Part shown: positions 7,417-40,967 of the stretch, piece after piece | Layout of the letters: each line of letters begins with the position of its first letter | Position numbering within the stretch: position 1 is the stretch's first letter | Notes under the pieces: model-generated | What the model was told of the DNA's origin: nothing | Databases searched by the model: none | The model's input: only the letters and a program-made list of their open reading frames with translations | Translations under genes and position numbers: made by a program | From: Fimbriosthenelais zetlandica | Taxonomy: Eukaryota | Assembly (NCBI GenBank): GCA_977030845.1 | Contig: OZ365115.1 | Coordinates: forward strand, 1,922,001 to 1,986,000 | Reading direction: 5' to 3' | DNA length: 64,000 nucleotides

Positions 7417-10400
7417 ATGGCGGATCAACTAGGTGAGTGGAGAGATTTATGTGTAGGTGTAAAGTTTGAATCACTGTTACAGTGGGTGACCCCAGTCAGT
7501 ACGGGAGGTGTGTATCAACAACACTCCCACTGACAGTGACAGACAGTCTCTGACAGCAGGCCTGTCACTATGCTGTCACAGTCAGGCCTCATCACGGCCC
7601 ATCACATCCTACACATGTCACTTATTGTTAATCTCAAAATTGATTTTACTTCGTTTTGTTTCCAGTTGTTTAGTTCAGAAGTTTTGTTGACTGTGTTGTG
7701 TCAATTTGCAACTAGATATTGCATGTCTATTATTTATAGTAGATATTTAATCACAAATTATCCCCTGAAACACTGGAATTTATATCAAATTTTAGCTAAA
7801 ATCAGTTACATTTACAGTAACTATTTAGTTACAGTGTCATTGATTTTAGGGACAGGTGATAATTTGGATGTGTATTGAATAATATTTCTATAGATACTTA
7901 GTTGGATGTGTATTGAATATTTTGAGATTATTTGGAGGGAGGTATTGGCTTGAGTTGAGTGGTATGAAGGTGTTGAGTGAGGTATAGCTTGTACATGTGA
8001 ATGATGTAGTTAGCTGGGAGGTTAAACCTATAAATACAGGGAAGTTAATCTAACATTGATAGGTGTTTAATATGAGCGGGAGGGGGCGTCCACATGGCGT
8101 GCATGTATGAGGACAGACTGACAAGCTTTAAGCTAATTATAGCACAATGAAACAGTTCATTTATTATTGATACTTAAACACATGGCCGACTGGTGCACCT
8201 CAATACTGTATTATTATCATATCCTCATTATTTGTATGAAGAGTGCAAACATTTAAGTTTAATATTTAAATATTTCCTACATATTCTCATCCCTTCCTCT
8301 CGCTCCATCCCTCCTTCCATTCTCTCTGTCTTACTTTCTCTCGCTCCTTCTCCCTCCATTACCTCTCTTCCTAATTCCAATCCATTTCCAGTGTTACAAA
8401 TGAATCACATTCGAACTTCCAACCTTCACTCCCTCACATTAAACTAAGTGATTGGTTCCTCCGTTTTAAACTAAACTTTAATAACTTTACAATTGCTAAT
8501 ATATTTCACACGTCAGCCAAAATGGACAGACTAAGCGAAACTAAAATTGACGCGTCAAAAATAACCGTAGAATAAAATAATGTTTTCTTTTCCTTAATTG
8601 TCTGTAATACTGAATATCTAAAACCTAGATTAGGATTATTGTTTCGTAACGTTTTCTAGTAAAGTGTTCTCGTCTTGTGAGTTTTTTAATTTTAAAGATA
8701 AAATAATTATTTAAATGTAAAGATTGAGAAAAGTTTGGCAATTTTTGCAGAGAACAGAGAACAAGTAGAAGTCTGGGAGCCAATCGGTCAGTTTAACCCT
8801 TTATTGTTAAACACGCGCGCTTAACCCTCTCTTCACGCATGAGCTTCTAGATGCAGAAAATATCAAGTCTAAATCTTTATCACATTTTGTACATACTTTC
8901 CCGTGAAGTCCACTTGTGACCAGTGTTTTCTCTGTATTTACTACTTTAGGCCTACATCAGTAATTCATCTGATTATAATGTCATTCTGGTTCTGTATTTT
9001 ATAATGACGTCATTCTGGTGTCTATATTTGGCCTCAGCTCATGTCAGCTGTTTTCATGATGCGTGATGTGTTGACACCATTAGCCAACACTTGGCTTATC
9101 TCCTCTAATCCTGCTGATCCGGCTCTACTAAATACCGTATATAATCATGTCGCCTTATCTACCACTCTTGGCCCATGTACTAAATACCGTATATAATCAT
9201 GTCGCCTTATCTACCACTCTTGGCCCATGTACTAAATACCGTATATAATCATGTCGCCTTATCTACCACTCTTGGCCCATGTACTAAATACCGTATATAA
9301 TCATGTCGCCTTATCTTCCACTCTTGGCCCATGTACTAAATACCGTATATAATCATGTCGCCTTATCTACCACTCTTGGCCCATGTACTAAATACCGTAT
9401 ATAATCATGTCGCCTTATCTACCACTCTTGGCCCATGTACTCAGTTTTTCTTATAATAACAGCATGAAGTAAGCAGCCTATACAGTCTGTGATTAGACTA
9501 ACTTAGAATCGGTATATTAATATACAATGTACATGTTCGTTTCATGTTATGATATATTAATAACATAAGGTATGTGTATATCAAATAAGCGTCCTTGTAT
9601 CTCTTTCTCTCTGTCTACAATTTTGTCTATCTTATGTCTGTCCCTTTTAAATTTACCTATCCATCCAGATTCCTCCATCCATCCAATCATCCATCTATCC
9701 ATATCCCACCCTTCATTCCACCTATTGAATTCACCCATCCACCCATCCATCCAGATTCCATCAATCCATCCATCCATCTATCCCCCACCCTTCATTGCAC
9801 CTATCCATCCACCCATCCATCCCAACCTAAGTGAACCTCTATTCATTTTATCACAGTATGACCTGTAATAAAATGAAATAAATAAATTTAATCCTGTACT
9901 TCCAAAAATATACCAGTCACGTCTGGTGAACCAGGTCCTCTGTGTTTAGGTGTGTAGGTATGGGAGTGTGTTCGTGAGAGTGAGGGTGGGGGGGTCGTGA
10001 GAGTCAGGGTGAAGGAGGGGGTCGGGGTGGGGGGTTACTGTCTATAGTGTTAGTCATTGTACTATTTCTGGGTCATAGCGACCTAATCTAAATATATATT
10101 ATCAGATCTGATAAAAAGTCCCAATAGAAATTTCTCTAACAGGTGTAAAAGTCCAGGTATATTCCCCCATGACCTCTGGTTGCGTTCAGAAACCTCTAAT
10201 ATTATTATAATAATAAATTGATTTAAGATTTGTTCTTATCAGATTATAGTAGGATCATTAACCCTATCTTCCCAAATTAATGTGGGAAAAGTCGGTGAAT
10301 CGGGATTTACTTTGTACTGGATTCAGTAGGGTATATAGCACCTACATTGTTAGTTCACTTATCTTATCTAAAATTAATTAAAATTAGAAATATTAGTAAA

Positions 10401-13400
10401 TTGGCTTTGTGGGTGTCTTATCTTGTCGAGTTTTAGAAAGTTTAATATTAGTTGACAAGTTTACGAACACATCCAGGTAGCTAAGTGTGGAGGTGAAAGT
10501 TGTGTAAAGAATTTACCTTCAGAAAAATCCCCAACTTTCTAGCAACGCCTCGTGATTTACCCCAGCAGGATCAGGAAGCAAGGAGAGTTAACACAAACAG
10601 ATTTAATTTAAATTTACTGTGATTTTATGGGAAAATAGTAGCAATCTAAACGAAGGGATTATCTGTGGAAGCAGGAGGGCTATACCTCCGGATTAAGTTA
10701 GAATTTTGAAATGTAGAATACATTTATTACAGAAGAATTTAAAACAGCTGATACTGGAGTAAAACAGTTTTATCTAAGCCAGAAAATCGTTGATGTACGG
10801 ATTAAAACCTTTGGTAGGAGTAGGAGCTCTCATGAAGGGATTAACTGTAATGTATGGATTATGGACGCCGGATAATTAATCTATAAGTGAATTGTTTGTG
10901 GATCGTGGAAAAGAAACTCAAGGTGGAAGTTCAAAGATTAAAGATTAACATATATGAGTAATTAGTTAATGGCTAGTGACTAATGATCAGAGCTCTGAGA
11001 CGTGGAGCTGTTCAGTTATGACGTCACATGTACCACAAGTCATGACGTCACGGTTGTCAGGAGGAATGACGTCATGTAGTACGTCACGACCTACGTCATA
11101 CCACGCGCCGCCTCATGAGTGGGACGCTACATTGATGACGCCCGTGTCATGGGGTCACGCCTCCTTACACCTCTATTTCTCTACCACCGGTACGAGCCGA
11201 CATCAAATAATTATAATTAATTAATGTTATAACACTTCACAGTGTTTAGGAATGGGGAAAATATTGAACTACATTCTATATTTTTATTGAAAAGAGGATA
11301 CTTCATTTAGTTTAAGTAATCATGAAGTTCATTATGAGTCTGTCCCCCTGTCCCCTCTATCTGTTTCTAATTGTCTCTCCCCTGCTCTCCCCTTTCAGCT
11401 TCATGTGTTTCCTTCTCCCCCTCTTTTTCCCCTCTCCCCTTCCTCTTTCTCTCCTGTATCTCTCTTCTCTCAGACTGTATCAGTCTGTCTCTCCCTGCCT
11501 CCATCTCTCCCATCTCTCTCCCTGCCTTCTCTCTCAGTCCCCCATTTCTCTCCTCTCAGTCTCTCAGTCTCTCACTCTCCTATCAGTATAAGTGTATTAA
11601 GAGCCGCCCCATCATGTTACGTGACATAAATCGTAACATCGCTAATGACGGCTAAGTGAACGTCAATCAGTAAAAGGTCACGCGGCTAGTTGGTGGTTTT
11701 AGTCCACCGTACTTCAGCGCGTCTGCTAACGAGGCTAATTAACGCTGCCTAATTAACAGATGTTTATCAAACTCAAATATGTACATCTTTATTTATGTAC
11801 GTTAAACATTTAAAGACCATATTAGGGGCAGGCTTAGAGATGTGGACCCCCACCCCCTGAATCATACGGTCCCAATGGTCCACTCTCTAATAGGTCAATG
11901 TGGGGAAGAAACTATTTAATATTGTCCTCAGGTAGCAGAGATATTGCTGACTGGACGATAAACTTATATGCATATTTTGTATGTACCTATGTTAAAAATA
12001 CAGGTGTCTGTTGGACGTCCAAAATTAAGCCCCCAGACCGTGGAAAATCTTGGATATATGTCCCGGGATATATGTATCTCGGAAGAAAATGGAAATGAAA
12101 TAGAATGCTTTAATTTAATGGTGCCCGCCCCCTGCCCCAACCCTAACTTCTTGGTACAAACAGTGGGTGAAATAAATTGTATTGTTTGATTTTAGTTTAC
12201 TATTAAATATTTTGTCTTGTCGTTTCAGTGAACAGTGCCGCTAACGGGCGGAGGATTAACTTTGTAGAGCAATGTTTCGGCACCTCAGGCCAAGTAAGAT
12301 ATTCACAGTTTATATTCAATCACTGGTCAAAATTCGTGAAATCTAAATTACTTTTAATGCGGGAAGAATGGTTTGAAATAATATAATATATTGAATAAAA
12401 AGATCATGGATATATTATGAGGTACAGGGGTGGAAGAAAGGATCATAATTCATCTCATAATAATTAATATATTTCTCTGTGATATTAAGCTTTCATTTTG
12501 TCCTTCCAGCCGCTTGCCATGCCTCACCGAGTCCTGGTCGGGGAAGGCGTCCTCACCAAAATGTGTAGAAAGAAATCAAAACCTCGACAATTCTTCCTCT
12601 TTAACGACATTCTGGTTTACGGCAATATAGTAGTTAACAAGAAAAAGGTCAGTCAAGACTTCATCTTCTACGAGTTACACAACATTTATTTTTTAATTTA
12701 AAAGTTAAATTTTATAAAGATTTGTAAGGGAACATTACTTCTTTGAATGATTGGGTTTTCATGACATTAGGTCTGTCTAATATTATATAGATCTACTGTG
12801 TGAGTGATATATTAATATTTTATGTCATGTTTTACAGTATAATAAGCAGCATATTATTCCCCTGGAGAACGTTACTCTCCAGCCTGTAGCTGATACTGGA
12901 CGTAAGTTACAATTTACTGCCTTAATTTACTGAAATTTTGCAACTAAATTTACTGAAATTTTACATATATAATTGTCTAGTTATTTACAAACTATGGTTA
13001 GTAGAACTAGTGGTCACAAATGACTCCATACGTTATAAATTTACCAGAATATTTTGATCGTTTAGAAGATAATCTGGCTGTGAAATTGTAATATAATTTA
13101 TTATTTCAGATTTACGTAATGGGTGGCAAATAATCAGCCCGAGTAGGTCGTTTACAGTTTACGCGGCGACAGCGACAGAGAAGACTGAATGGATGGCGCA
13201 CATCAATAAATGTGTGCAAGATCTCCTCAAAAAACGTGAGTCTGTCTACTCCTAAATCCAAAACACTTCAGAGATAATTTAGGATACAGAAAAAAACATG
13301 CTAGTATCAAGCAAACTATATTGAATATATTCAAAATTTGATAAGGTAGACATGTTGTCCTTAATGGCAGAATGTTTTGGAGATTTTGAGACATCTCGCA

Positions 13401-27769: not shown

Positions 27770-30700
27770 TTAGTTTTTAGCCGCTGTGAGCGTCTGTCTC
27801 GCCATCTTTAACACACCCTCGTACGTCTTGTTACCGCCGATAAAACCTGACGCGTGCACGAATATACAGCCTGGTATGCCACTTAACGTAGACAGCTCCT
27901 CATCACGAATACCACGCCACGCCTCCAACAACGACAACCTGAAAAATATATACAACAATCATGGTTAGAAGTCAAATTGATGATGGAACAGTGAGAACAA
28001 TACCTCTGGAAAGCTAGCGGGACGGAGAGCAGGAGACAATGAGAGTGAGGGATAGTTGAGAGAGATAGGGGGAGAGAGGGGAAGGGAGATGGAGACAGGG
28101 AGAGAGAAGAGACAGAGCGAGACGGAGAGAGACAGGGAGTGATAGAGAGAGAGACAGACAGATAGACAGAGATAAGGGGCAGAGACGGATCCACAGTCTT
28201 AGCTGGGGATTTAATGTGGTGAATAGACGATTTATTAGTGAGAAGAGGACAAGGTGAAATATGGGGAATATCCACAGCCTGAGTGGTACATTTAATAGGA
28301 TTAATAGACCAGAGAGAGAGGAGAGACAAAGGGGAGAAAGAGAGAGATGGGAGAGAGGAGAGAAAGAGAGATGGGAGAGGAGAGAAAGAGAGATGGGACA
28401 CAGCGAGTCAGAGAAAGAGAGCAGACAGTTAGAGATGGAGAGAGGAGACAGAGACTGAGAGGGACAGCAATAGAGGGAAAATAACTCTGACCTGTTGGTG
28501 AATGAGCCTAGAGCCTGTGGTACACATTGTACCCGCCAGTTGTCGCTCTGATCGGTAAAGAGGACAAACTTGATGGGCGTGGCTAATCCTAGCTCCTCCT
28601 CCAACGTCATGAGGTGGTCCTTCCACGGACATCCCCCCGACGTCAGCTTGATAATCTCTCCACTGTCATCTACCTGTAAATAATAACCAGACATTACATG
28701 ACAAATAGTACACCAACAATCAATTATGTAAAAACCAAATATGAATAATCTGCTTGATAACAAGTAACAAGGTACCAGATATACAATAAAAATGCAACTA
28801 AAACTAACTAAAGTAGGTCTCAGAACACCAGCTACTGTTTTAAAGGATTTAAATTTAGATTTTTTTTTGATTTTTGAGATGTTAATTGACTGACCTCCTT
28901 TCTCTGGTTGATGGCTGTGAGGACCAGCTCGCGTGCGGGCAGCCAGCCGTCCCGGTAATACTCCACTCTGTCTGTAAACTCTGATCCCACCAGCTTCATG
29001 GCCTGCTGAAACCGAGCCTAAATGAGACAAAATAATTATAACATTATATAACATCAATAAACGTAGATATAGTCTTGCAGCACGCACAAGTCTTTGATAC
29101 TTTCATTTTGTTAGAATTAACCCATACTAAAATCAACTAGCAATGTCTGACCCTTCCCATCTCGCCCGTCTATCTCCCAACTAAGAAATTACAGTGGATT
29201 GAGGAACAAAATCTAAAATAAAAAGTATAAATACTTACAAAGATGTCGACATCTTTAGTGTCGTTCCATCGAGGATTGAGGTGACCAACGCGTGCACTGA
29301 GGTTAGTGGTGATGGCGTACCTGAAAATTATAAAATAAAAGGTTAGCAATGATATACTTGTAACCGATAATAATAAAATAAATACATTTAATACATATTG
29401 CATTTAATGCAATATGTGTGTCACATAAGTTGTAATCTTAAAAAAACTTTAGGTGGCTCAAAAGGTCAGGTAAAAAGGGCCGTGATCTACTGGTGCTCAA
29501 TAAGGCATGTATTATCACTCTGATAATGTCTGCCTAGAAATAATCAAGTCACTATGAATATTGTAAACTTGATACTTCGCCTTTGTGTTTTATTTTTAGT
29601 TGTTGGCTCATAAATACCCTACAAGCAGAGTAGTATGTGGGTGAATTGTAACGCAAAATCAGATAAAATGTAATAAATGTTTCAGATACAAAAGGAAAAG
29701 ATTTACTGGTTGACAAGTTGGAACAATAAATATATATATGTCGGCCCCTACGCTCTATTAAAAAAGCGCTCAAGCGGGCTCACACCTGTATAATTATGTG
29801 CTTCATTGAGCTCAGCGCATTGTTAGGCCTGTATCTGATAATCTCTATCCTACTAATCCACTCCGGACATCTCAACCAGGGAAAGATCACTTTTTTACAG
29901 GACTAGTGAACGTGAAGAAGATGGGAGAGAAGTGGGAGCGGCGCGCGCTGCAGACTGCCTTGTTTGTGGCGGCTCTGGCTGTAGCTACGGCCAGCTACAT
30001 GTATAATGCCTGGTCAAGGAACGCCTCACTCACATGGTTCATCTCATGGGGTGAATACTACATTTATATAGGCATTCTCTAATGTTATAATAGATTATTT
30101 AATAATTCCATCTGAATCTGCAAGAGCACCACACTCACTAGCTGAGTGTCTTGTAATGTTTCACACTAGCTGAGTGTGTTGTAATGTTCACACTAGCTGA
30201 GTGTCTTGTAATGTTTCACACTAGCTGAGTGTCTTGTAATGTTTCACACTAGCTGAGTGTGTTGTAATATTCACACTAGCTGAGTGTCTTGTAATGTTTC
30301 ACACTAGCTGAGTGTCTTGTAATGTTTCACACTAGCTGAGTGTCTTGTAATGTTTCACACTAGCTGAGTGTCTTGTAATGTTTCACACTAGCTGAGTGTC
30401 TTGTAATGTTTCACACTAGCTGAGTGTCTTGTAATGTTTCACACTAGCTGAGTGTGTTGTAATATTCACACTAGCTGAGTGTCTTGTAATGTTTCAGGTG
30501 CTGTGTTGGTGGTACTCGTTCTTGCCTCTCTGGTTTGTCTGGATATTTGGCTACTGTCACCAGCTGACAGTCACACTATTGTCACTCTACTGTCACAATA
30601 TGTTTTCATTGTTAGCGTCAGGATAATGGTGGCTGTCAACCGTCCATTCTACACCCAGCTCACCAAAAAGCCAACAAAGGTAACATTATTTTACTTGGTT

Positions 30701-33700
30701 ATCCACTTTAGAAGAAAACCAGAAAAACGTCTATCAAGTACATGATTGTATATTTCAGTACAATATAGAAAGCCTGATGAGAATTCTACGTACTAACCAA
30801 GATACGGAGTATGGGAGAGAGTATAAATTCAGGGAGATTCACACTCAGGCTGACTTCAAGAGACGTCACCCCATCACAACAGAGACCCACTATAGAACGT
30901 ACATCCAAAAGATGATGGACGGAGAGAAAAATATACTATATAACGACGAGACTCTAGTGTATGCAAGTACTTCAGGCACAACAGGCCAGGCTAAAGTTTT
31001 CCCTCTCAGAAAAACACACATCAGGCAGTTAAGGAAAGCTTTGGGCCTCAGGCACATGAGACTGCTACCCATGCTGAATTTGAAGAGGAACTTCACATTC
31101 CATATGTTCTCACAAATGAGCAAAACAAATGGTGGAGAACCCTTGGGTGCTGGATCTCAAATCGTTCGTAGTTTCCCAAAACACAACCTCATTCCTGTAG
31201 AATACCAGAATCTAGTGGATGAACGATCATCTTTCTATACCATGGCTCTCTTCTCTCTCGCCGAACCAGAACTTGGCCATATCTCATCATTTTCATCGGA
31301 TCTTACTAATTCCTTCGTCAAGTTCATGATGATGAACTGGAGTGATCTGTGTGACGATATTGAGAGAGGGAGAGTGGGCAGTGTGGTGACAATGTCAGAG
31401 GACGTACGGATTGCTCTGTCCAGCAAACTGAAGTCTGACCCTGAGAGAGCGGATTACTTGAGGAAGGCCATGGAGGATGGACCAGTGGGGCTGTTCAGGA
31501 GGGTGTGGCCGACCATGGATTATATCTTGATGGGTAAATCAGCTAGCTTTAAGATGCTGGCCGATCAGCTGATGGAGAGACAGATGAAGGGAGTGAAGGT
31601 GGTAGGGTCTCAACATGGAGCTACAGAAGGTTTTACGGGTGTGAACATGGAAGAGGAGCCGTGGGTCGGGGAAACTTTCACCATGTATCCCGCCTTCTGC
31701 TTCATGGAGTTTATACGACTGGAGGATGTGGAGGAGGACGCCCCAGACACGGTCAACATTGACCAGGTACGTTATAATTAGGATAAAACTTTGGAAAAAC
31801 TTTTGCTTAGAGAGTAGGCGTACAATTTGCCATTTCCCTGCCAGAGCATCAAAAGCCAACGGAGAAACATAACCCTGTATTGACAAGCAAAATTGTGTGA
31901 ATTGTAATTGTCTCCTTGCTCATTTGCTGGGCAAAAATATGGTAATTCCAGCTAGAAGCAGGAATCATCCATGGAATCTGTCCTAGTATTTAGGGAAGGT
32001 AACAAATGATTGTGATCCATAGCATGTTATTATCGTAAGTTTGTCTGGAACTATTTTCAGCTGGAAGTGGGTCAGTTTTATGAAGTGGTTCATACCAACT
32101 TAAACGGTTTGTACCGGTGTAGGTATGGTGACGTCATCAAAATAGTCGGATTTGATAATCGCCTTCCAAAGTACCAATTCATGTACAGGTAAGCCTCAAT
32201 GTAGTTTGAAAATGTTCAACATAAAAATGGGCACATCGCGTCCTACCATTTAGTGGTCACATAGTGAGATGGTCGCTTTACTGAGTATGTCTTCGTGGTG
32301 TTAAAACATTTGGTTTTGACCATTGAATGGTCACATAATGAGATGGTCGCTTAAGTGACTGATCATGATGTTATATTTATTAAGCTGATATTATTATTGT
32401 CTGCACCTACAGGCTGGGTCAGAGGCTGAACATCGCCTATGAGAGAACACCTGATAAGTTTCTGTATGAAGCTTTAGACAAGGCAACTACTAAACTACAC
32501 CTGAAAGATGGCATGGCCAACTATACCACCACAGAGAGCACAGTCACCGACCAAATACTAGGTAAAAAAGTCAATGATATTTGTCCAAAGCCTAGATTAT
32601 TAGTAAATTATCCCACTGTTCCAACGTTTCTCAGGTGGCTAGTAATTATAGGTTCATAAAACTGAATCTAATTCTTCTTTTCACAATTCAACATAAATTA
32701 TGATTTACAGGGAAAGAGACCCAGGGACATTACGTCTTCTTTGTTGAGTTTAATGAAGAGAAGGACCCAGAACTCTTGTCTGACTTGGGCGAAAAGGTAA
32801 TTAAAATTTACAATTTTAAATAATATTTTTAAAATATAAGAACATTCCTCACGAGGTTTTCCCTGCTAGCAGGCTGTACCTAAATGAAATTCTATTTTGC
32901 TGGGAGATAACAGTTCTATGTATGAATCTATATGAAACTATTTGGTATTTCAGATTGACGGTCAGTTAGTGGAGATATACGCCCCCTATAAGCGGTTTAA
33001 GGACGTCGGTAACATCGCAGTGGTCGAGGTGATACAGGTCAGTAACCATGGTAACAGTATAGTCTAATTAAATGTTAAATGCCTCTCCTATTGTTTAAGT
33101 ACCAGGTATTAGTATTTCATAGGGGGACATATCTTTTGTTTTAGGGCCCTTATTATTATGAAACTAATTTATTTTATCTACTGGGAAGAGATATATAGTG
33201 AATAACTCATGTGCCGTATCAATATTTCCCTTGTGTCCAGGTGAAGCCCGGCACCATTGAGTCCATGGTACCTATTTTGATGGGAGCTCGTGTGAATCCA
33301 CAGTTCAAACTTCCCCGAGTTCTCCGTAAGAGACCAGCCATCAAACATCTACTGGACAACACCGTGCCTGCCACGAGTCACCTCAACAATGAACAATGAG
33401 GCGGACTTAACAATGAGGCAGACTCAACACTGAGGCGGACTTAACACTGAGGCAGACTCAACACTGAGGCAGACTCAACACTGAGGCAGACTAACCAATT
33501 TCCTCACTAAACCACACTGTAAAGTTCATTGTTACGTCCTGAATATAGTTCTATCATTCAAAGTCTATAGTTATAATTGTTTAGTATGCGTTACCATGGC
33601 TCGTTACCTTGGTTATAATTGTTTAGTATGCGTTACCATGGCTCGTTACCTTGGTTATAATTGTTTAGTATGCGTTACCATGGCTCGTTACCTTGGTTAT

Positions 33701-36700
33701 AATTGTTTAGTATGCGTTACCATGGCTCGTTACCTTGGTTATAATTACCTTGGTTTAGTGTTTAGTACACGTTATCTTGGTTATAAATCTTAGTTAGTGG
33801 TTAAGGCATACCTGACAATATACAAAATAAAGGTTAGTGGTAATGGCGTACCTGATAATTAGAAAATAAAAGGTTAGCAATGATATATTTGTAACTGATA
33901 ATAATAAAATAAATACATTATTTAATACAGGCATTTAATGCAATATGTGTGTCTCATAAGTTGTAATCTTGAAAAACTTTAAAAATGGTTGGCATCCTCT
34001 GTTTCTCTGTGTTATAAGTCTTTTTTGGCTGACATTGGTTGATAATTCGCTGTAAGTATAAGCCTACCTAATTTACATAGTGAACCTGTTACAGAACACC
34101 AAGGCTCTATAAAAAAAACACACAAAAACCATGGACATATATATTGTTACACGTACATGTGACATGTGTAGTAGATAGATAGTTAATGTTTACTGGCGTT
34201 TAATAATGTTTAATGATATTTAGTAATGATTAATAATGTTTCAAAAGGTTTAATAATGTTTTATAGTATTTTACACGGTCTAATGATTTGTAATAATGAT
34301 ATCGTGTATCATGCTTTGTGGTAATTATCATGTAATCTTTATTATCAGATGAATCAGCAGTCATACTATTCCCACCTTTCATATTCCTTTCTTCTCTACC
34401 TTCCATCTCTATGCTCCCCCTTTCAGAGCGCCGCCAGGTGGACCTCTTGACCTGGCGGGCTCCTCTACTATACATCTATTGTTAACAATATCACGGATTA
34501 CCTGACAACGCCTGTCTACTTCAACTATAGGTGGCCCTCAAAACGTCAGGTAAAAAAGGCCGTAATCGATACTGGTGCTCAATATGCCACTACAGATGCT
34601 TAAGATAAAGAATATAAGGCCACTCTGATCTACTTGAAATAATAAGGCCTTAAGATAAGGAATATATTATCACTCTGATAGTCTCCTTGAAATAATAAGG
34701 CCTTAAGATAAGGAATATATTATCACTCTGATAGTCTCCTTGAAATAATCAAGTCACTATGAATATTGTAAACCTGATACTTCGTCTTTGTGTTTTATTT
34801 TTAGTTGTTGGCTCATAAATACTCTACAAGCAGAGTAGTATGTGGGAGAATTGTAATATAAAATCAGATAAAATGTAATAAATGTTTCAGATACAAAAGG
34901 AAAAGACTTACTGGTTGACAAGCTGGAACAATATTATATCGGCCCCTACGCTCTATTAAAAAAAACGCTCAAGCGGGCTCAAACCCGTGTATGTTTCATT
35001 AGCGCATTGTTAGGCCTGTATCTGATAATCTCTATCCTACTAATCCACTAATCTTAACCAGACAAAGATCACTTTACAGGACTAGTGAACGTAAAGAAGA
35101 TGGGAGAGAAGTGGGAGCGGCGCGCGCTGCAGACTGCCTTGTTTGTGGCGGCTCTGGCTGTAGCTACGGCCAGCTACATGTTTAATGCCTGGTCAAGGAA
35201 CGCCCCACTCACATGGTTCATCTCATTTGGTAAATTATAGATTTACTTATAAATATACTTAAATTTCTGCATAATCATGATACTTTTGTTAATTTCAGCT
35301 AAAATCTCCGAAACAGACTTGAAATACTAGATATTTAGATAATATCAATACTTCTTAAAAAATATATTATATTGTTATGTGCACAAGCCAAAAGTTCACC
35401 GAAAATAAATGAAATCAAATCAATATACTTTTTATATTGATATCCCAAATCCGTGCCTGAACATGCCAGTTTAGACTGGATAATCTTTATAGACATTGAG
35501 TGATTCAAGAATAGGGAAAATATACATTATATTTCTAGAGAAATAAGGCTGTAGTATATAATACCAGATTAGAAGCGTATTGATTGAATCAAAGTCCATA
35601 GAAGGATACTTGGTATAATCTAATCAGGCTTAGCAATACTATAAAAACATAAAGTATAGAGCAAATATTTGTTACAGGTAGAAGATATGCCTACTTTAGT
35701 AAAGGCCTACATGCAAATATATAAGAAATGTCAAAATATCTAGATACATGTAATTGTATATTATGAAATGGTATCCGCCTATGGCATATTTAAATATGGC
35801 CACAATTGCGATTATGTAATCGCAAGTATATTGTAAGGGTTCTATCCAACAGAAGTATGATCAGAATAGACACATAAGGCCCTATACTTCCCATTGTATT
35901 TACATTCGGATTTGGGCGTTGTAGCCATGATTGAACCACACTATTCGGTTTTTATATAACAATTCTCTATTCTATGGTTGTGCAATGGCCTGCAACAGGC
36001 CACAACCACGATCGCTATTTATAGAAGTAGTTGTCCCAAGAAATGTAATAGAATGTAATGTTTCAGGTGCTGTGCTGGTGGTCCTGGTTCTCGCCTCTCT
36101 GGTTTGTCTGGATATCTGGCTACTGTCACCAGCTGACAGTCACACTATTGTCACTCTGCTGTCACAATATGCTGTCATTGTTACCATCAGGATCACTATG
36201 GCTGTCAACCGTCCTTTCTACACCCAGCTCACCAAGAACCCAGCAAAGGTAACATTATTTTACGTGGTTATCCACTTTATAACAAAACCAGAAAAATGTC
36301 TAATAGGGCTCATCCACTAGGTCGCAAGGGGCAAGAGATTGCTTGCGATCGTGTTATTAGCGATCAGAAGCGAGCACATGGATGTGGATGAAGAGCTTGT
36401 ACTTGGCGATCAGATCGCTTGTGTTCATTCACATAAGCGATTGGATCGCCAGGTGCAAGCGATCAGATCGCCCGTGTTCATCCATATAAGCGATCTGATC
36501 GCCAGGTACATTGGTGATCGCTTTTAATCGCACAAAATATTAAACATTCTAAATATTGAGCGATTTGATCGCTAGTGATCGCTGATCGCCAGTGATCGCT
36601 TCCCCCTTGCGATCTAGTGGATGAGGCCTATAACAAGTACAATGATTGTATATTTTCAGTACAATATAGAAAGCCTGATAAAAATTCTACGCCTCAACGA

Positions 36701-39700
36701 AGATACCGAGTATGGGAGAGAGTATAAATTCAGGGAGATTCACACTCTGGCTGACTTCAAGAGACGTCACCCCATCACAACAGAGACCCACTATAGAACG
36801 TACATCCAAAAGATGATGGACGGAGAGAAAAATATACTATACAATGACAAAACCATAGTGTATGCGAGTACTTCAGGCACGACAGGCCAGCCTAAAGTTT
36901 TCCCTCTCAGAAAAACATACATCAGGCAGTTAAGGAAAGCTTTGGGCCTCAGGCACATGAGACTGCTACCTATGCTGAATTTGAAGAGGAACTTCATTTT
37001 CCACATGTTCTCACAAATGAGCAAAACTAAAGGTGGAAAACCCTTGGGTGCTGGAGCTCAAACGGCTCGTGGTTTCCCAAAACACAACCTCATTCCTGTA
37101 GAGTACCAGAATCTAGTGGATGAACGATCATCTTTCTATGCCATGGCTCTCTTCTCTCTTGCTGAACCAGAACTTGGCTATATCTCTTCATTTTCAGCCG
37201 ATCTTACTAATTCCTTCGTCAAGTTCATGATGCTGAACTGGAGTGGTTTGTGTGACGATATTGAGAGAGGGAGAGTGGGGAATGTGGTGACAATGTCAGA
37301 GGACGTACGGATTGCTCTGTCCAGCAAACTGAAGTCTGACCGTGAGAGAGCGGATTACTTGAGGAAGGCCATGGAGGATGGACCAGTGGGGCTGTTCAGG
37401 AGGGTGTGGCCCACCATGGATTATATCTTGATGAGTAAATCAGCTGGCTTTAAGATGCTGGCCGATCAGCTGATGGAGAGACAGATGAAGGGAGTGAAGG
37501 TGGTAGGGTCTCTCCATGGAGCTACAGAAGGTTTTACGGGTGTGAACATGGAGGAGGAGCCGTGGGTCGGGGAAACTTTCACCCTGTATCCCGCCTTCTG
37601 CTTCATGGAGTTTATACGACTGGAGGATGTGGAGGAGGACGCCCCAGACACGGTCAACATTGACCAGGTAGGATATAATTAGGATAAAACTTTGGAAAAA
37701 CATTTGCTTAGAGAGTAGGCGTACAATTTTTCCATTTCCCTGCCAGAGCATCAAAAGCCAATGGAGAAACATAACCCTGTATTGACAAGCAAACGTGTGT
37801 GAATTGAAATTATCCCCTTGATCATTTGCTGGGCAAAAATATGGTAATTCCAGCTAGAAGCAGGAGCAAAAATCATCCATGGAATCTGTCCTAGTATTTG
37901 GGGAAAATATCAAATGATTGTGATCCATAGCATGTAATAAACATAAGTTTGTCTTGACCATATTTCAGCTGGAAGTGGGTCAGTTTTATGAAGTGGTTCA
38001 CACCAACTTAAACGGTTTGTACCGGTGTAGGTATGGTGACGTCATCAAAATAGTCGGATTTGATAATCGTCTTCCAAAGTACCAATTCATGTACAGGTAA
38101 GCCTAAATGTAGTTTGAGAACTTTCTCCATAAAAAATGGGCACATCGTGTCCTACCATTTAGTGGTCACATTGTGAGATGGTCGCTTTACTGAGTATGTC
38201 TTCGTGGCGTTAAAACATTTGGTTCTGACCATTGAATGGTCACATAATGAGATGGTCGCTTCAGTGACTAATCATGATCTTATATTAATTAAGCTGATAT
38301 TATTATTGTCTGCACCTACAGGCTGGGTCAGAGGCTTAACATCGCCTATGAGAGAACACCTGAGAAGTTTCTGTATGAAGCTTTAGACAAGGCAACTACT
38401 AAACTACACCTGAAAGATGACATGGCCAACTATACCACCACAGAGAGCACAGTCACCGACCAAATACTAGGTAAATATTACCACCACAGAGAGCACAGTC
38501 ACCGACCAAATACTAGGTCAATATTACCACCACAGAGAGCACAGTCACTGACCAAATACTAATTCATGTTTTCACATTTCAAAATTTAAAACATATTTTC
38601 TGACCTACAGGGAAAGAGACTCAGGGACATTACGTCTACTTTGTCGAGTTTAATGAAGTGAAGGATCAAGAACTCTTGTCTGACTTGGGCGAAAAGGTAA
38701 AAATAGAAATTTACTATTTTTAATAATAATTTTAAGTAATAATAGTAAATAAACCAACTAAAAAAAAAACATTCCTCAAGAAGTTATCCCTGCTAGCAGG
38801 CTGTACCTAAATGGAAGTCTCTTTTGCTGAAATCTAAATATGATAATGGTATTTCAGATTGACGGTCAGTTAGTGGAGATATACGCCCCCTATAAGCGGT
38901 TTAAGGACGTCGGTAACATCGCAGTTGTCGAGGTGATACAGGTCAGTAACCATGGTAACAATATAGTCTAATTAAATGTTAAATGCCTCTCCTATTGGTA
39001 CCAGGTATTAGTATTTCATAGGGGGACATGTCTAGGCCCTTTTTGGACAGTCACCTTGTTTCAGGGCCCAAATTATGATGCCACTAGTTATGTTAATATT
39101 TCTACCTGTGTTCAGGTGGAGCCCGGCACCTTTGAGTCCATGGTGCCTATATTGATGGGAGCTCGTGTGAATTCAAATTTCAAACTTCCCCGAGTTCTCC
39201 GTAAGATGCCAGCCATCAAACATCTACTGGACAACACCGTGCCTGCCACGAGTCACCTCAACAATCAACAATGAGGCGGACTCAACCCTGAGGCAGACTC
39301 AACACTGAGGCAGACTCAACACTGAGATAGACTCAACAATGAGGCAGACCCAAAAATTTCCTAACTTAACCTTCAGTTCGATAAGCACAGTCCACTCTAA
39401 AGTTGATTCTTACATCTGAATAAAGTTAAGTCATTAAAAAGTCTGCTGATACCGTTGCCTATAGTTATAATTGTTTAGTACACGTTACCTTGGTTATAAT
39501 TGTTTAGTACACATTACCTTGGTTATAATTGTTTAGTACACGTTACCTTGGTTATAATTGTTTAGTACACGTTACCTTGGTTATAATTGTTTAGTACACG
39601 TTACCTTGGTTATAATTGTTTAGTACACGTTACCTTGGTTATAATTGTTTAGTACACGTTACCTTGGTTATAATTGTTTAGTACACGTTACCTTGGTTAT

Positions 39701-40967
39701 AATTGTTTAGTACACGTTACCTTGGCTATAATTGTTTAGTACACGTTACCTTGGTTATAATTGTTTAGTACACGTTACCTTGGTTATAATTGTTTAGTAC
39801 ACGTTACCTTGGTTATAATTGTTTAGTATGTATTACCTTGGTTCGCCGTCGGCTGTGCTGATACCGTTGTCTATAGCGTCCACCTCCTCCACAAACAGCT
39901 CATACACCTTGTCATAGATGACGCCTGTGACGTCATCACCAGGTTTAGTTCCCAGAATACCCGCCAGGACGCGGCGACCGAAATGTAGGTAAACGAGACC
40001 AGCGCTGCTTAACTTAGTCACCCACTTCTTACCCGAGCAGAGCGTGCTCATAGACTCAGAGAACGACCTAAAAATACAAATCATTCATACAATATATACT
40101 AAAATCATATTAAACTTATTCTGGGTTTATGATATCCGTGGTTATTCACAGCATAGAATTTCCATTTTTGGCCATTTTTATTTGGCTCTAACTTAAATTA
40201 GAACAGGTTTGATAGACATGGGAGAGGGCGGTGATAGCTTATTATGTGATAGGACAATAGGCTACACTACTCTGTATACTGACCATGAAGGTATCATCAT
40301 TAATAACATTACTTATTTCCCCTGAATGCCTCAGTTATCAATATGGTGTATATAACTGACCTCTGGTGGTGATCGTATCTGTGAGTAGCTGGATCATACA
40401 GGCCGCCTACATCAACGACAATATCACACGTCTCCAGCACGGCCGGGTCACGGGTCCTGAAATAAAAATTCATTTCAAAATCATTTATTGGAGAGTATTA
40501 ATATTACTTATATAAGGAGTTTTAATATTATTGAAGAGGGATCATATCCCCAGCTACCTTGCTTTTCCAATTCTTTTCTAAAGTGGATAATTAACATTTT
40601 CGATAATACTTTACAAAACTCCTGACAATATCGGTAATAGTGTACGTTTTATGCTCTTTTCAAAAGGAAAATTATGCAGCAGAAAACTGGTTTAGATATT
40701 CATGAATACTGTTCCTGATTTCCCAAAATTCACTGACATAATTACTAAGTCTATAGAAGTTTTCCTATCTTTAAGGCTGAAATAAATGTTTTTTCATGAC
40801 GTTTTTTAGTTAGTTTAATACCTGAGGATCTCGGCGTCGTTGTATTCTGGTAGTTGTTTCAGCATGTAGCACGCGAACACCTCGTCACAGTGGAAGGTAC
40901 CATTATGTGTACCGATCTTCTTTACAGGACAAGCCTTCTTAGCTGCGTTACCCTCGACATCCGCCAT
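27770..40967 (-). CDS. MYG1: MYG1 exonuclease (UPF0160, DHH-like)
   Basis: Exons 40967-40822, 40456-40361, 40067-39837, 29320-29239, 29017-28895, 28673-28492, 27938-27770. Motifs [26 protein letters not shown]...[75 protein letters not shown]. Confidence 0.97.
29921..33399 (+). CDS. GH3-family (GHDC-like) acyl-adenylate/amido synthetase, copy 1, nested in MYG1 intron 3
   Basis: Exons 29921-30050, 30498-30679, 30759-31766, 32061-32188, 32413-32561, 32711-32796, 32954-33037, 33241-33399; 641 aa, no frameshift or internal stop. GH3 N-domain ([12 protein letters not shown]...FKRRHPITT), P-loop [22 protein letters not shown]-terminal QFKLPR; hydrophobic N-terminus. Confidence 0.9.
30135..30497. 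repeat. 28-bp minisatellite, ~13 copies, filling GH3 copy-1 intron 1 up to the acceptor
   Basis: Unit acactagctgagtgtcttgtaatgtttc; absent from copy-2 intron 1. Confidence 0.9.
33570..33795. repeat. 42-bp minisatellite related to the MYG1 exon-3 donor repeat
   Basis: Unit gttataattgtttagtatgcgttaccatggctcgttaccttg; paralogous to the 29-bp array at 39463-39836. Confidence 0.88.
34330..34500. repeat. Dispersed repeat family member (second copy at ~60020-60190)
   Basis: Shared core ttctctaccttc(c/t)at(c/a)tctatgctccccct(t/a)tcagagcgcc(g/a)ccagg(t/c)ggac...acctggc(g/a)ggctcctc, both preceded by taatgttt-rich tracts; absent upstream of GH3 copy 1. Confidence 0.7.
35100..39274 (+). CDS. GH3-family (GHDC-like) acyl-adenylate/amido synthetase, copy 2, nested in MYG1 intron 3
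   Basis: Exons 35100-35229, 36067-36248, 36660-37667, 37969-38096, 38322-38470, 38611-38696, 38858-38941, 39116-39274. Exon lengths identical to copy 1 (130,182,1008,128,149,86,84,159); intact frame; same GH3 motifs; 27 aa differences from copy 1 in the 336-codon exon 3. Confidence 0.9.
36306..36628. mobile_element. MITE inserted in GH3 copy-2 intron 2
   Basis: Termini GGGCTCATCCACTAGGTCGCAAGGGG ... CCCCTTGCGATCTAGTGGATGAGGCC (~26-bp imperfect TIR), flanked by TA on both sides; many internal GCGATC motifs; empty site visible in copy 1 (~30730). Confidence 0.85.
39463..39836 (-). repeat. 29-bp tandem array (~13 copies) containing MYG1 exon-3 donor motif
   Basis: Unit gttataattgtttagtacacgttaccttg; on the minus strand each copy reads CCAAG|GTAAC, mirroring the real CCAAG|GTAAT donor at 39837/39836. 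Confidence 0.9.

What the first reader, a model, noticed from the sequence alone, without database searches (positions are those of the whole stretch)
29900..39300. Two intact membrane-anchored GH3-family amido synthetase genes nested antisense inside one MYG1 intron
Seen: two complete 8-exon genes (641 aa; identical exon lengths) on the + strand fill MYG1 intron 3 (29321-39836). Each has a hydrophobic N-terminus ([13 protein letters not shown]; FIS(W/F)[20 protein letters not shown]; IVTLLSQY(V/A)(F/V)IV) followed by a GH3 domain with STSGTTG, HGATEG and YRCRYGDV. Established: plant GH3 enzymes (JAR1, IAA-amido synthetases, PBS3) adenylate carboxylic acids and conjugate them to amino acids, while the animal GHDC protein has no established substrate. 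Inference: a lineage-specific expansion of membrane-tethered acyl-amino acid synthetases could make N-acyl amino acid signals or defence/detoxification conjugates in an invertebrate.
Basis: partly seen in the sequence, partly recalled or inferred. Interest (0 to 1): 0.78.

Follow-up and report, generated by a model that had tools for sequence, protein, structure and literature searches.

The report
Two nested animal GH3 enzyme genes
Two intact, recently duplicated genes for membrane-anchored GH3-type (plant-hormone-conjugating-like) enzymes really do sit backwards inside one intron of the MYG1 gene, but such genes are common and multi-copy in many invertebrates, so this is an ordinary new member of a known, still uncharacterised animal enzyme family.

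Summary
Two 8-exon, 641-aa genes lie on the + strand (29921-33399 and 35100-39274). All splice sites are GT-AG, exon lengths are identical, and the proteins are 92.4% identical. Together they fill intron 3 (29321-39835) of a minus-strand MYG1 gene. Both carry the GH3 N-terminal and middle domains, the three nucleotide-binding motifs, the C-terminal QxKxPR lysine and two N-terminal hydrophobic helices. Both have evolved under purifying selection since the duplication (omega 0.33 and 0.43).

They are not GHDC orthologues. They fall in a separate spiralian GH3 clade, and forcing them into the GHDC clade is rejected (AU p 6e-12). The exon-3 model matches plant GH3 enzymes (TM 0.8-0.87) better than human or mouse GHDC (0.53-0.61).

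The locus is not exceptional. This genome has at least 10 GH3 loci, including a young clade of six (a seventh, exon-3-only fragment was not placed on the tree). Multi-copy, N-terminally hydrophobic non-GHDC GH3 genes are annotated in brachiopods, echinoderms, hemichordates, tardigrades, nemerteans and molluscs.

Expression is untested because no RNA run was listed. The substrate is unknown. One near-invariant hinge lysine is arginine here. The scan's first readers also noted the sister tandem pair on the same contig.

Verdict: a real new member of a known kind, of modest interest.

The parts
29921..30050 (+). GH3a exon 1 (start codon, first hydrophobic segment)
   Evidence: donor GT
30498..30679 (+). 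GH3a exon 2 (strong transmembrane-like helix, conserved SHT motif, first helix of the GH3 fold)
30759..31766 (+). GH3a exon 3 (336 aa; GH3 N-terminal domain with P-loop TSGTTGQAK and the HGATEG motif)
   Evidence: Pfam PF03321 E 9e-51; AF2 pLDDT 90.6; plant GH3 TM 0.8-0.87
32061..32188 (+). GH3a exon 4 (GH3 middle domain, YRCRYGD motif)
   Evidence: Pfam PF23571 E 9e-13
32413..32561 (+). GH3a exon 5 (hinge; E493-R494 where the family has E-K)
32711..32796 (+). GH3a exon 6 (C-terminal domain)
32954..33037 (+). GH3a exon 7 (C-terminal domain)
33241..33399 (+). GH3a exon 8 (C-terminal QFKLPR lysine motif; stop codon included)
35100..35229 (+). GH3b exon 1
36067..36248 (+). GH3b exon 2
36660..37667 (+). 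GH3b exon 3 (P-loop TSGTTGQPK)
   Evidence: Pfam PF03321 E 3e-51
37969..38096 (+). GH3b exon 4
38322..38470 (+). GH3b exon 5
38611..38696 (+). GH3b exon 6
38858..38941 (+). GH3b exon 7
39116..39274 (+). GH3b exon 8 (stop codon included)
39836..40066 (-). MYG1 exon 3 (host gene), whose donor opens the intron that holds both GH3 genes
   Evidence: PF03690 positions 66-139; donor CAAG|GTAA
29237..29320 (-). MYG1 exon 4 (host gene), whose acceptor closes the intron
   Evidence: translation [27 protein letters not shown], with AG acceptor and GTAAGT donor
29300..33830 (.). Tandem duplication unit A (GH3a plus flanks, starting 21 nt inside MYG1 exon 4)
   Evidence: self-BLAST
33831..39835 (.). Tandem duplication unit B (GH3b plus flanks). 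It is 85-91% identical to unit A, with insertions
   Evidence: self-BLAST

Best explanation
GH3a and GH3b are two functional, tandemly duplicated paralogues. They belong to a non-GHDC animal branch of the GH3 family, which is part of the ANL superfamily of adenylate-forming enzymes.

Shown here: each gene encodes a 641-aa protein. Two N-terminal hydrophobic helices (about residues 9-27 and 38-63) precede a complete GH3 catalytic region (about residues 72-630) with N-terminal, middle and C-terminal domains. The region contains the P-loop TSGTTGxxK, the ATE motif, the YRxRxGD motif and the C-terminal QxKxPR lysine. An ancestral single GH3 gene already filled MYG1 intron 3. A duplication of about 4.5 kb, running from just after the exon-3 donor to 21 nt inside exon 4, then produced the pair. 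Both copies have stayed under purifying selection.

Inferred: the two helices form a signal-anchor or hairpin that tethers the catalytic domain to the cytosolic face of an internal membrane. The basis is the positive-inside rule, because the stretch after helix 2 carries about five net positive charges, together with the enzyme's need for ATP. By analogy with plant GH3 enzymes, the enzyme would first adenylate a carboxylic acid (acid + ATP -> acyl-AMP + PPi). The C-terminal domain would then rotate and an amine, probably an amino acid, would displace AMP to give an amide conjugate. The acid is unknown. The membrane tether makes a lipophilic acid a reasonable guess.
For: Gene models, GT-AG splice sites, equal exon lengths and intact ORFs.
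Pfam PF03321 (E 1e-51) and PF23571 (E 9e-13).
Both full-length proteins match a profile built without them end to end (residues 14-631, E 2e-163). They also align over residues 72-628 with a 560-aa bacterial GH3 that carries PF03321+PF23571+PF23572 (E 4e-83).
A profile of the animal relatives aligns colinearly with solved plant GH3 structures (4b2g, E 5e-102).
The AF2 model of exon 3 has pLDDT 90.6. It matches 26 plant GH3 enzymes at TM 0.78-0.87.
67 of 80 family-conserved positions are kept in both copies, including the P-loop, E394, R459/R461/G463/D464 and K612/P614.
Branch-wise omega is 0.33 (p 3e-4) for GH3a and 0.43 (p 0.007) for GH3b, with the C25:14.53 Mb paralogue as outgroup.
Hydropathy. 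The same N-terminal hydrophobic extension occurs in most animal homologues and is absent from bacterial ones.
The reaction mechanism is taken from plant GH3 work (PMC11253546).
Duplication anatomy.
A degenerate copy on contig C38 still carries a MYG1 exon-3 fragment downstream of its GH3 gene. This shows that the nested arrangement is older than that copy.
Against: No expression evidence exists for either copy. No RNA run was listed, so no reads could be laid.
The near-invariant hinge lysine is arginine in both copies, and in the whole young clade plus the C11 paralogue. This residue is K in all 6 bacterial, 26 of 27 GHDC and all 18 echinoderm sequences examined. By position I take it to be the conserved active-site lysine of plant GH3, but I could not confirm the residue numbering. 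The change could alter or weaken the second half-reaction.
Other family-conserved positions also differ: Y146E, F283S, P424R and Y460C.
Membrane topology rests on hydropathy and charge counting only.
No animal GH3 has ever had a demonstrated activity, so the chemistry is extrapolated from proteins that are only 20-24% identical.
Confidence: 0.78

Rival explanations
1. The proteins are expressed and adenylate a substrate, but they are not amino-acid conjugating enzymes. The acyl-AMP would be passed to a different acceptor (a thiol, a hydroxyl or a protein side chain), or the protein would act as a non-catalytic membrane scaffold, as may be true of vertebrate GHDC.
For: The hinge lysine is arginine in this clade. 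In plant GH3 this conserved active-site lysine has been linked to amino-acid substrate handling (PMC4294127). Identity to characterised plant enzymes is only 20-24%. No substrate is known for any animal GH3.
Against: All adenylation motifs and the full two-domain architecture with its hinge are retained. K to R is a conservative change. Purifying selection acts along the whole protein.
Confidence: 0.14
2. One or both copies are transcriptionally silent young duplicates that have not yet acquired disabling mutations.
For: Sister copies in the same young clade have already decayed. The C38 copy has a frameshift in exon 3 and an insertion of about 6 kb in exon 5. The C39:1.595 Mb copy is an exon-3 fragment only, and no exons 1-2 were found for C39:1.524 Mb. 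No RNA data are available. The genes lie antisense inside a housekeeping-type host gene, so transcriptional interference is possible.
Against: Both ORFs and all 14 splice-site pairs are intact at dS of about 0.1. Non-synonymous changes are significantly depleted on each branch separately (omega 0.33 and 0.43). About 400 bp of 5' flank is conserved at 89% between the copies.
Confidence: 0.06
3. The tandem pair is an assembly artefact, that is, two haplotypes placed in series.
For: Marine invertebrate genomes are often highly heterozygous. I could not check read depth.
Against: The units differ by about 15% in their introns, by unit length (4.5 against 6.0 kb) and by a 28-nt minisatellite present only in intron 1 of GH3a. 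The junction is a clean breakpoint inside MYG1 exon 4. A second, independent tandem pair exists at C25:14.53 Mb, and a related species also has a tandem pair.
Confidence: 0.02

Closest known systems
Plant GH3 acyl acid amido synthetases (JAR1/AtGH3.11, PBS3/AtGH3.12, AtGH3.5, VvGH3-1; PDB 4epl, 4epm, 5kod, 4b2g)
   Same: Same Pfam domains and the same two-domain fold. The exon-3 model matches at TM 0.8-0.87, and the animal-relative profile aligns colinearly at E 5e-102. The P-loop (T/S)SGT(T/S)xGxxK, the (S/T)E motif, the YRxGD motif and the C-terminal QYKxPR lysine are shared.
   Different: Identity is only 20-24%. The plant enzymes are soluble and lack the roughly 70-residue N-terminal extension with two hydrophobic helices. 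The hinge D-K of plants is E-R here. Substrates are known for the plant enzymes (IAA, JA, chorismate or benzoates) and unknown here.
Vertebrate/metazoan GHDC (GH3 domain-containing protein) orthologue group
   Same: An animal GH3 family member, usually with a hydrophobic N-terminal extension (16 of 25 GHDC-clade proteins). Full-length identity is about 31%. Its function is also unknown.
   Different: It forms a separate clade (SH-aLRT 98 for GHDC and 99 for the spiralian clade holding the window genes). Forcing them together costs 280 lnL units, AU p 6e-12. GHDC is roughly single-copy and tracks the species tree, whereas this clade is multi-copy. Most GHDC sequences inspected lack the P-loop lysine (for example TSGTSGSSRMLL), which the window genes keep. 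Human and mouse GHDC models match the exon-3 model only at TM 0.53-0.61. PF25146 scores below its cut-off (25.8 against 34.1 bits).
Non-GHDC 'GH3.x-like / JAR-like' proteins of other invertebrates (for example Lingula anatina XP_013413038, Haliotis asinina XP_067676689, Tubulanus polymorphus XP_074645783, Lytechinus XP_041453434)
   Same: Same length class (about 630-660 aa) and the same architecture: two N-terminal hydrophobic segments, an SHT-type motif, then the GH3 domains. They are multi-copy and often tandem within a species. The spiralian members share a clade with the window genes (99).
   Different: Identity is only about 30%. The window genes belong to a species- or lineage-specific sub-clade whose nearest outside relatives are unnamed ENA contigs at 42-49% identity. 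The hinge K to R change and the nesting inside MYG1 were not seen elsewhere.
Bacterial 'GH3 auxin-responsive promoter family' proteins
   Same: Full-length colinear alignment (residues 72-628 against 1-554 of a Clostridium protein, 30% identity, E 4e-83). The P-loop TSGTTGxxK is identical in form.
   Different: The bacterial proteins have no N-terminal hydrophobic extension (0 of 6). The window genes have seven spliceosomal introns and animal-wide relatives, so they are not a recent transfer.

Membership tests
GH3 family (Pfam PF03321 / PF23571 / PF23572; ANL-type adenylating enzymes) | GH3 N-terminal domain HMM above the gathering score | tested here: met
   173.3 and 175 bits against a 23.6-bit cut-off for exon 3 of both copies
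GH3 family (Pfam PF03321 / PF23571 / PF23572; ANL-type adenylating enzymes) | GH3 middle domain (PF23571) with the YRxGD-type motif | tested here: met
   48.6 bits against 23.6 for GH3a exon 4. [10 protein letters not shown] is present in both copies
GH3 family (Pfam PF03321 / PF23571 / PF23572; ANL-type adenylating enzymes) | C-terminal domain (PF23572), colinear with the rest of the protein | tested here: met
   Tested indirectly, because the spliced protein could not be passed to hmmscan. Full-length GH3a and GH3b align to residue 628-631 with proteins annotated PF23572 and with a profile built from them. Conserved C-domain positions E524, Y540, E545, D563, Y573, G593, K612 and P614 are kept
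GH3 family (Pfam PF03321 / PF23571 / PF23572; ANL-type adenylating enzymes) | Three nucleotide-binding motifs (P-loop, S/T-E, YRxGD) plus the C-terminal lysine QxKxPR | tested here: met
   TSGTTGQ(A/P)K, GATEG, YRCRYGD and (Q/N)FKLPR are present
GH3 family (Pfam PF03321 / PF23571 / PF23572; ANL-type adenylating enzymes) | Conserved hinge-region lysine (E/D-K-T) | tested here: not met
   The residue is Arg494 in GH3a, GH3b, the other young copies and C11. It is Lys in nearly all other family members examined. The change is conservative and its consequence is unknown
GH3 family (Pfam PF03321 / PF23571 / PF23572; ANL-type adenylating enzymes) | GH3 N-domain fold | tested here: met
   AF2 pLDDT 90.6 and pTM 0.86. 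Foldseek probability is 1.00 and TM 0.78-0.87 to 26 plant GH3 entries
GH3 family (Pfam PF03321 / PF23571 / PF23572; ANL-type adenylating enzymes) | ATP-dependent adenylation of a carboxylic acid and transfer to an amino acid | not testable with these tools
   Requires a biochemical assay
GHDC orthologue group | Phylogenetic placement inside the clade that holds vertebrate, amphioxus and invertebrate GHDC | tested here: not met
   Separate clades with SH-aLRT 98 and 99. The constrained tree is rejected, delta lnL 280, AU p 6e-12 (the group was named after the tree had been seen)
GHDC orthologue group | PF25146 (vertebrate GH3 N-terminal domain) above the gathering score | tested here: not met
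   25.8 and 23.3 bits against a 34.1-bit cut-off
Nested (intronic, antisense) gene | The whole gene lies within one intron of a host gene, on the opposite strand | tested here: met
   MYG1 exon 3 ends at 39836 and exon 4 starts at 29320, both on the minus strand. Both GH3 genes lie between them on the plus strand
Membrane-anchored protein | At least one transmembrane helix | tested here: inconclusive
   Kyte-Doolittle 19-residue mean reaches 2.8 across residues about 38-63 and about 1.6 across 9-27. The pattern is conserved in homologues. No TM predictor, full-length fold or experiment was available

The most novel reading that the evidence does not exclude
The non-GHDC animal GH3 clade, to which these two genes belong, consists of active, membrane-tethered acyl-acid amido synthetases. 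Unlike most GHDC orthologues, the clade keeps the canonical ANL P-loop lysine. On this reading the enzymes make lipophilic acyl-amino acid conjugates used as signals, defence compounds or detoxification products in marine invertebrates. The repeated lineage-specific tandem expansions, including this pair, would reflect diversification of substrate range.
Probability: 0.22. Interest if true: 0.65.

Novelty: new member of a known kind. Interest (0 to 1): 0.33.

Why it matters
GH3 enzymes are central to plant hormone control, yet no animal GH3 protein has a known substrate. This locus adds two clean, full-length gene models. They show that invertebrates hold a second GH3 branch distinct from GHDC. 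That branch keeps the full adenylation motif set, is closer in predicted fold to the plant enzymes than human GHDC is, carries a membrane anchor, and duplicates readily. These genes are therefore better candidates than GHDC for finding out what animal GH3 enzymes do. The nesting inside MYG1 is a tidy example of an intronic gene being duplicated in place, but it has no demonstrated functional meaning. Nothing here changes current understanding. It is a usable lead for an enzyme-deorphanisation project.

Tried and rejected
1. Expression. Two sequencing-run searches (kind rna), one with exon 3 of each copy, listed no run. Read laying therefore could not be used, and expression stays untested. This is not evidence of silence.

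2. Literature. Four full-text searches found no paper on the function of GHDC or of any invertebrate GH3-like protein.

3. Own protein in public sets. No database protein is more than 49% identical to exon 3. The spliced 641-aa proteins have no single reference, so they could not be passed to Pfam hmmscan, structure prediction or the listing of cluster members as whole proteins. I used exon 3 by reference and did the full-length comparisons inside scripts.

4. Short-exon PDB searches with exon 5 and exon 8 found nothing. A profile search replaced them.

5. Conservation of the nest. Loci of the nearest relatives in another species (ENA ERZ25767047; L021, L028) show no MYG1 exon within 10 kb on either side. 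These genes are not clear orthologues of GH3a/GH3b, so this does not date the nest. DNA for a third relative was unavailable.

6. GHDC orthologue in this genome. Six-frame searches with a mollusc (P0238) and an annelid (P0327) GHDC-clade protein hit only the same clade-II loci, at 35% identity or less. No GHDC orthologue was detected. Short exons could have been missed, so I do not claim that it is absent.

7. Rejected reading, 'ordinary GHDC orthologues'.

8. Rejected reading, recent horizontal transfer from bacteria: the genes have seven introns and the clades are animal-wide.

9. Plant sequences could not be added to the tree because no tool returned them as usable protein ids. The relation of the animal clades to plant GH3 is therefore not resolved here.

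10. The idea that paralogue differences cluster in the acyl pocket (the scan's separate note s1-196228) was only glanced at. Differences are dense at residues 79-118 and 217-242, but I could not map them onto a pocket.

Full report
**1. Observation**

The region 29900-39300 contains two complete genes on the + strand. I read GH3a exon by exon from the sequence. I then located GH3b by aligning the GH3a exons to the downstream DNA.

- Both genes have eight exons of identical length: 130, 182, 1008, 128, 149, 86, 84 and 159 nt.
- Every intron has GT-AG ends.
- Both translate to 641 aa without internal stops.
- The proteins differ at 49 residues (92.4% identity) and the coding sequences at 96 of 1926 nt. 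The pairwise estimates are dN 0.037, dS 0.105 and dN/dS 0.35.

Pfam confirms the family. PF03321 (GH3 N-terminal domain) scores E 9e-51 and 3e-51 on the two exon 3 translations. PF23571 (GH3 middle domain) scores E 9e-13 on exon 4.

**2. The host gene**

PF03690 (MYG1) matches minus-strand exons at 40800-40919, 40357-40479, 39836-40066, 28886-29017, 28476-28679 and 27788-27943. A short fourth exon lies at 29237-29320 and encodes [28 protein letters not shown] found it by eye, with a proper acceptor and a GTAAGT donor.

**3. How the pair arose**

A self-comparison shows two tandem units, A (about 29300-33830) and B (about 33831-39835). They are 85-91% identical, with insertions in B.

- The left breakpoint lies 21 nt inside MYG1 exon 4. 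The junction between the units therefore carries a copy of the exon-4 acceptor plus 21 nt of exon (33831-33851), and a second partial copy next to it.
- The ancestral intron was thus about 4.5 kb and almost entirely occupied by a single GH3 gene. The duplication copied nearly the whole intron.
- A decayed GH3 copy on contig C38 has a frameshift in exon 3 and an insertion of about 6 kb in exon 5. It still has a MYG1 exon-3 fragment downstream of it in the same relative orientation.
- This shows that the GH3-in-MYG1 arrangement is older than that dispersed copy.

**4. The family in this genome**

A six-frame search of the 447-Mb assembly with PF03321 finds 13 matches at about 10 loci. Exon-level comparison and trees give the following picture.

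- A young clade of six on the trees: GH3a and GH3b; a second intact tandem pair at C25:14.53 Mb (641 and 642 aa); a copy at C39:1.524 Mb for which only exons 3-8 were found; and the C38 pseudogene.
- A further exon-3 fragment at C39:1.595 Mb, 83% identical to GH3a exon 3, which was not included in the trees.
- Three older paralogues on C11, C1 and C27, at 46%, 34% and 31% identity in exon 3.
- GH3a and GH3b are each other's closest relatives (SH-aLRT 97-98).

With the C25:14.53 Mb copy as outgroup, substitutions can be assigned to each branch. GH3a has 20 synonymous and 23 non-synonymous changes (omega about 0.33, p 3e-4 against neutrality). GH3b has 17 and 26 (omega about 0.43, p 0.007). Both copies have therefore been under purifying selection since the duplication. 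This is the best evidence available here that both are functional.

**5. What the proteins are**

- *Full-length match.* The full-length proteins match a profile built from 16 homologues from residue 14 to 631 (E 2e-163). The profile did not include the two window proteins themselves. They also align over residues 72-628 with a 560-aa Clostridium GH3 protein that carries all three Pfam GH3 domains (30% identity, E 4e-83).
- *Match to solved structures.* A profile of the animal relatives aligns colinearly with solved plant GH3 structures (4b2g, E 5e-102; also GH3.12, JAR1, GH3.5, GH3.6, GH3.8 and GH3.15). Exon 3 alone hits the same structures at E of about 1e-16.
- *Predicted fold.* An AlphaFold2 model of exon 3, built with a 48-sequence alignment, has mean pLDDT 90.6. 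Against Swiss-Prot models it matches 26 plant GH3 enzymes at TM 0.78-0.87 and 20-24% identity. Human and mouse GHDC match only at TM 0.53-0.61 and 16-19% identity.
- *Conserved positions.* Of 80 positions that are at least 80% conserved among 59 homologues, 67 are kept in both copies. The kept motifs include:
  - the P-loop TSGTTGQ(A/P)K, which is the canonical ANL form;
  - E394 in the GATEG motif;
  - Y458-R-x-R-x-G-D464;
  - the C-terminal (Q/N)FKLPR lysine.
- *The one notable departure.* This is the hinge residue after E493. It is Lys in all bacterial, echinoderm, hemichordate and nearly all GHDC sequences examined. It is Arg in GH3a, GH3b, the other young copies and C11, while the older paralogues C1 and C27 keep Lys. 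The plant literature describes a conserved active-site lysine in this part of the protein (PMC4294127). I could not confirm the residue numbering, so the functional meaning of K to R here is open.

**6. Membrane anchor**

Hydropathy shows a strong segment at about residues 38-63 (19-residue mean up to 2.8) and a weaker one at about 9-27. It is therefore more likely the first helix of the GH3 fold than a third membrane span.

The N-terminus has K4, R7 and R8. The stretch after helix 2 has R85, R92, K100, K101 and K104. By the positive-inside rule, both ends of the helix pair face the cytosol, which places the ATP-using domain in the cytosol. This is an inference.

The extension is not peculiar to this lineage. 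An N-terminal extension with at least one hydrophobic segment is present in 17 of 18 echinoderm, 6 of 6 tardigrade, 17 of 22 spiralian/unassigned and 16 of 25 GHDC-clade proteins. It is absent from all 6 bacterial proteins.

**7. Relation to known groups**

A profile search returned named relatives from many phyla. A second search seeded with GHDC-like invertebrate proteins returned fish, lamprey, shark and amphioxus GHDC. In a 96-sequence maximum-likelihood tree rooted on bacteria:

- The GHDC proteins form one clade (SH-aLRT 98). It runs from a coral through arthropods, molluscs, annelids and echinoderms to vertebrates, and it roughly follows the species tree.
- The window genes fall in a different clade (99) with Tubulanus, Haliotis, Macrostomum, five Lingula paralogues and unnamed sequences.
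- Echinoderms, hemichordates and tardigrades have their own multi-copy non-GHDC clades.
- The order of these clades is unresolved.

Forcing this genome's genes into the GHDC clade costs 280 log-likelihood units (AU p 6e-12) (the group was defined after the tree had been seen). Most GHDC sequences have lost the P-loop lysine, which the window genes keep. Species such as Lingula, Tubulanus, Lytechinus, Acanthaster and Paramacrobiotus have both a GHDC orthologue and several non-GHDC copies. In this genome I detected only the non-GHDC type. Short exons could have escaped the search.

**8. Mechanism proposed**

*Shown:* two intact, selected genes that encode a complete GH3 two-domain adenylating enzyme behind a hydrophobic N-terminus.

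*Inferred from plant GH3 enzymology (PMC11253546):*

- ATP, Mg2+ and a carboxylic acid bind the open form.
- An acyl-AMP forms and PPi leaves.
- The C-terminal domain pivots about the hinge.

The membrane tether suggests a lipophilic acid. The acid, the amine and even the second half-reaction are unknown for any animal member.

**9. Novelty and verdict**

The features presented as special are widespread, however. RefSeq already annotates dozens of such genes as 'IAA-amido synthetase GH3.x-like', 'JAR4-like' or 'GH3.12-like' in brachiopods, echinoderms, hemichordates and others, often as tandem arrays.

The genes are not GHDC orthologues. That is a useful clarification and makes this branch a better target than GHDC for finding an animal GH3 activity. 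The nesting in MYG1 is real, but there is no sign that it is more than an accident of insertion followed by local duplication. The scan's first readers also flagged the sister tandem pair on the same contig (s1-203955, s1-204001).

I rate this a new member of a known kind, with modest interest.

**10. Limits**

- There are no expression data.
- There is no read-depth check of the duplication.
- Topology comes from hydropathy only.
- No plant sequences are in the tree.
- The species is unidentified. The tree indicates a spiralian. Another agent's note (s1-203907) suggests an annelid, which I did not test.

Noticed in passing
window 39464-39843 (minus strand, directly after the MYG1 exon 3 donor at 39836/39835): A 29-nt minisatellite of 13 copies. 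Read on the MYG1 strand, each unit repeats the exon-3 donor region (ACCAAG|GTAACGTGTACTAAACAATTATA against the true ACCAAG|GTAATACATACTAAACAATTATA). Thirteen look-alike 5' splice sites therefore follow the real one. A diverged version of the same repeat lies at 33570-33786 in duplication unit A.
   Followed up: partly
window 33793-33877 (minus strand): The tandem-duplication junction carries two copies of the MYG1 exon-4 acceptor plus up to 21 nt of exon 4 (TTATCAG|GTACGCCATTACCACTAACC and TTGTCAG|GTATGCCTTAACCACTAAC). Donor-like CAAG|GTAA repeats follow within about 100 nt. This could act as a cryptic frame-shifting cassette exon in MYG1 intron 3. RNA data are needed to test it.
   Followed up: partly
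window 38433-38561 (GH3b exon 5 / intron 5); also L014:3650-3873 and L015:3420-3661: The last 37 nt or so of exon 5, together with its donor, are repeated 2.8 times at a 46-nt period just inside intron 5. Use of the second donor would shift the frame. The same multiplication occurs in the C25:14.53 Mb pair and in C39, but not in GH3a. The scan's note s1-204001 reports it for the other pair.
   Followed up: partly
window 30136-30496 (GH3a intron 1): A 28-nt minisatellite of 13 copies (95% matches) fills most of GH3a intron 1. Its last unit supplies the acceptor of exon 2 (TGTTTCAG|GT). No matching array was detected in GH3b intron 1 (35230-36066).
   Followed up: no
G000:C39:1562329-1562574, C39:2566704-2566940, C38:1156281-1156442: Three extra copies of MYG1 exon 3 alone. 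Two are 89-92% identical at protein level to the window exon and contain a stop codon. These are pseudo-exons left by segmental duplications of the MYG1/GH3 locus. The C38 fragment lies downstream of the decayed GH3 copy there.
   Followed up: partly
L028 (ENA ERZ25767047 ctg37809, locus coordinates 957-2186 and 10001-11062): The nearest other species in the databases also has two GH3 exon-3 ORFs in tandem about 9 kb apart on the same strand. Tandem GH3 pairs therefore recur in this lineage. No MYG1 exon lies within the 21-kb locus.
   Followed up: partly
whole genome G000: Searches with mollusc and annelid GHDC-clade proteins found only the non-GHDC GH3 loci. This genome may lack a canonical GHDC orthologue, although related phyla have one.
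   Followed up: partly
window 28014-28480 (minus-strand ORF 28014-29087): Composition is unusual at 28000-28499 (GC skew +0.6, AT skew +0.5). A long low-complexity Ser/Leu/Pro-rich ORF overlaps the region between MYG1 exons 6 and 7. It is probably a simple repeat in an intron.
   Followed up: no
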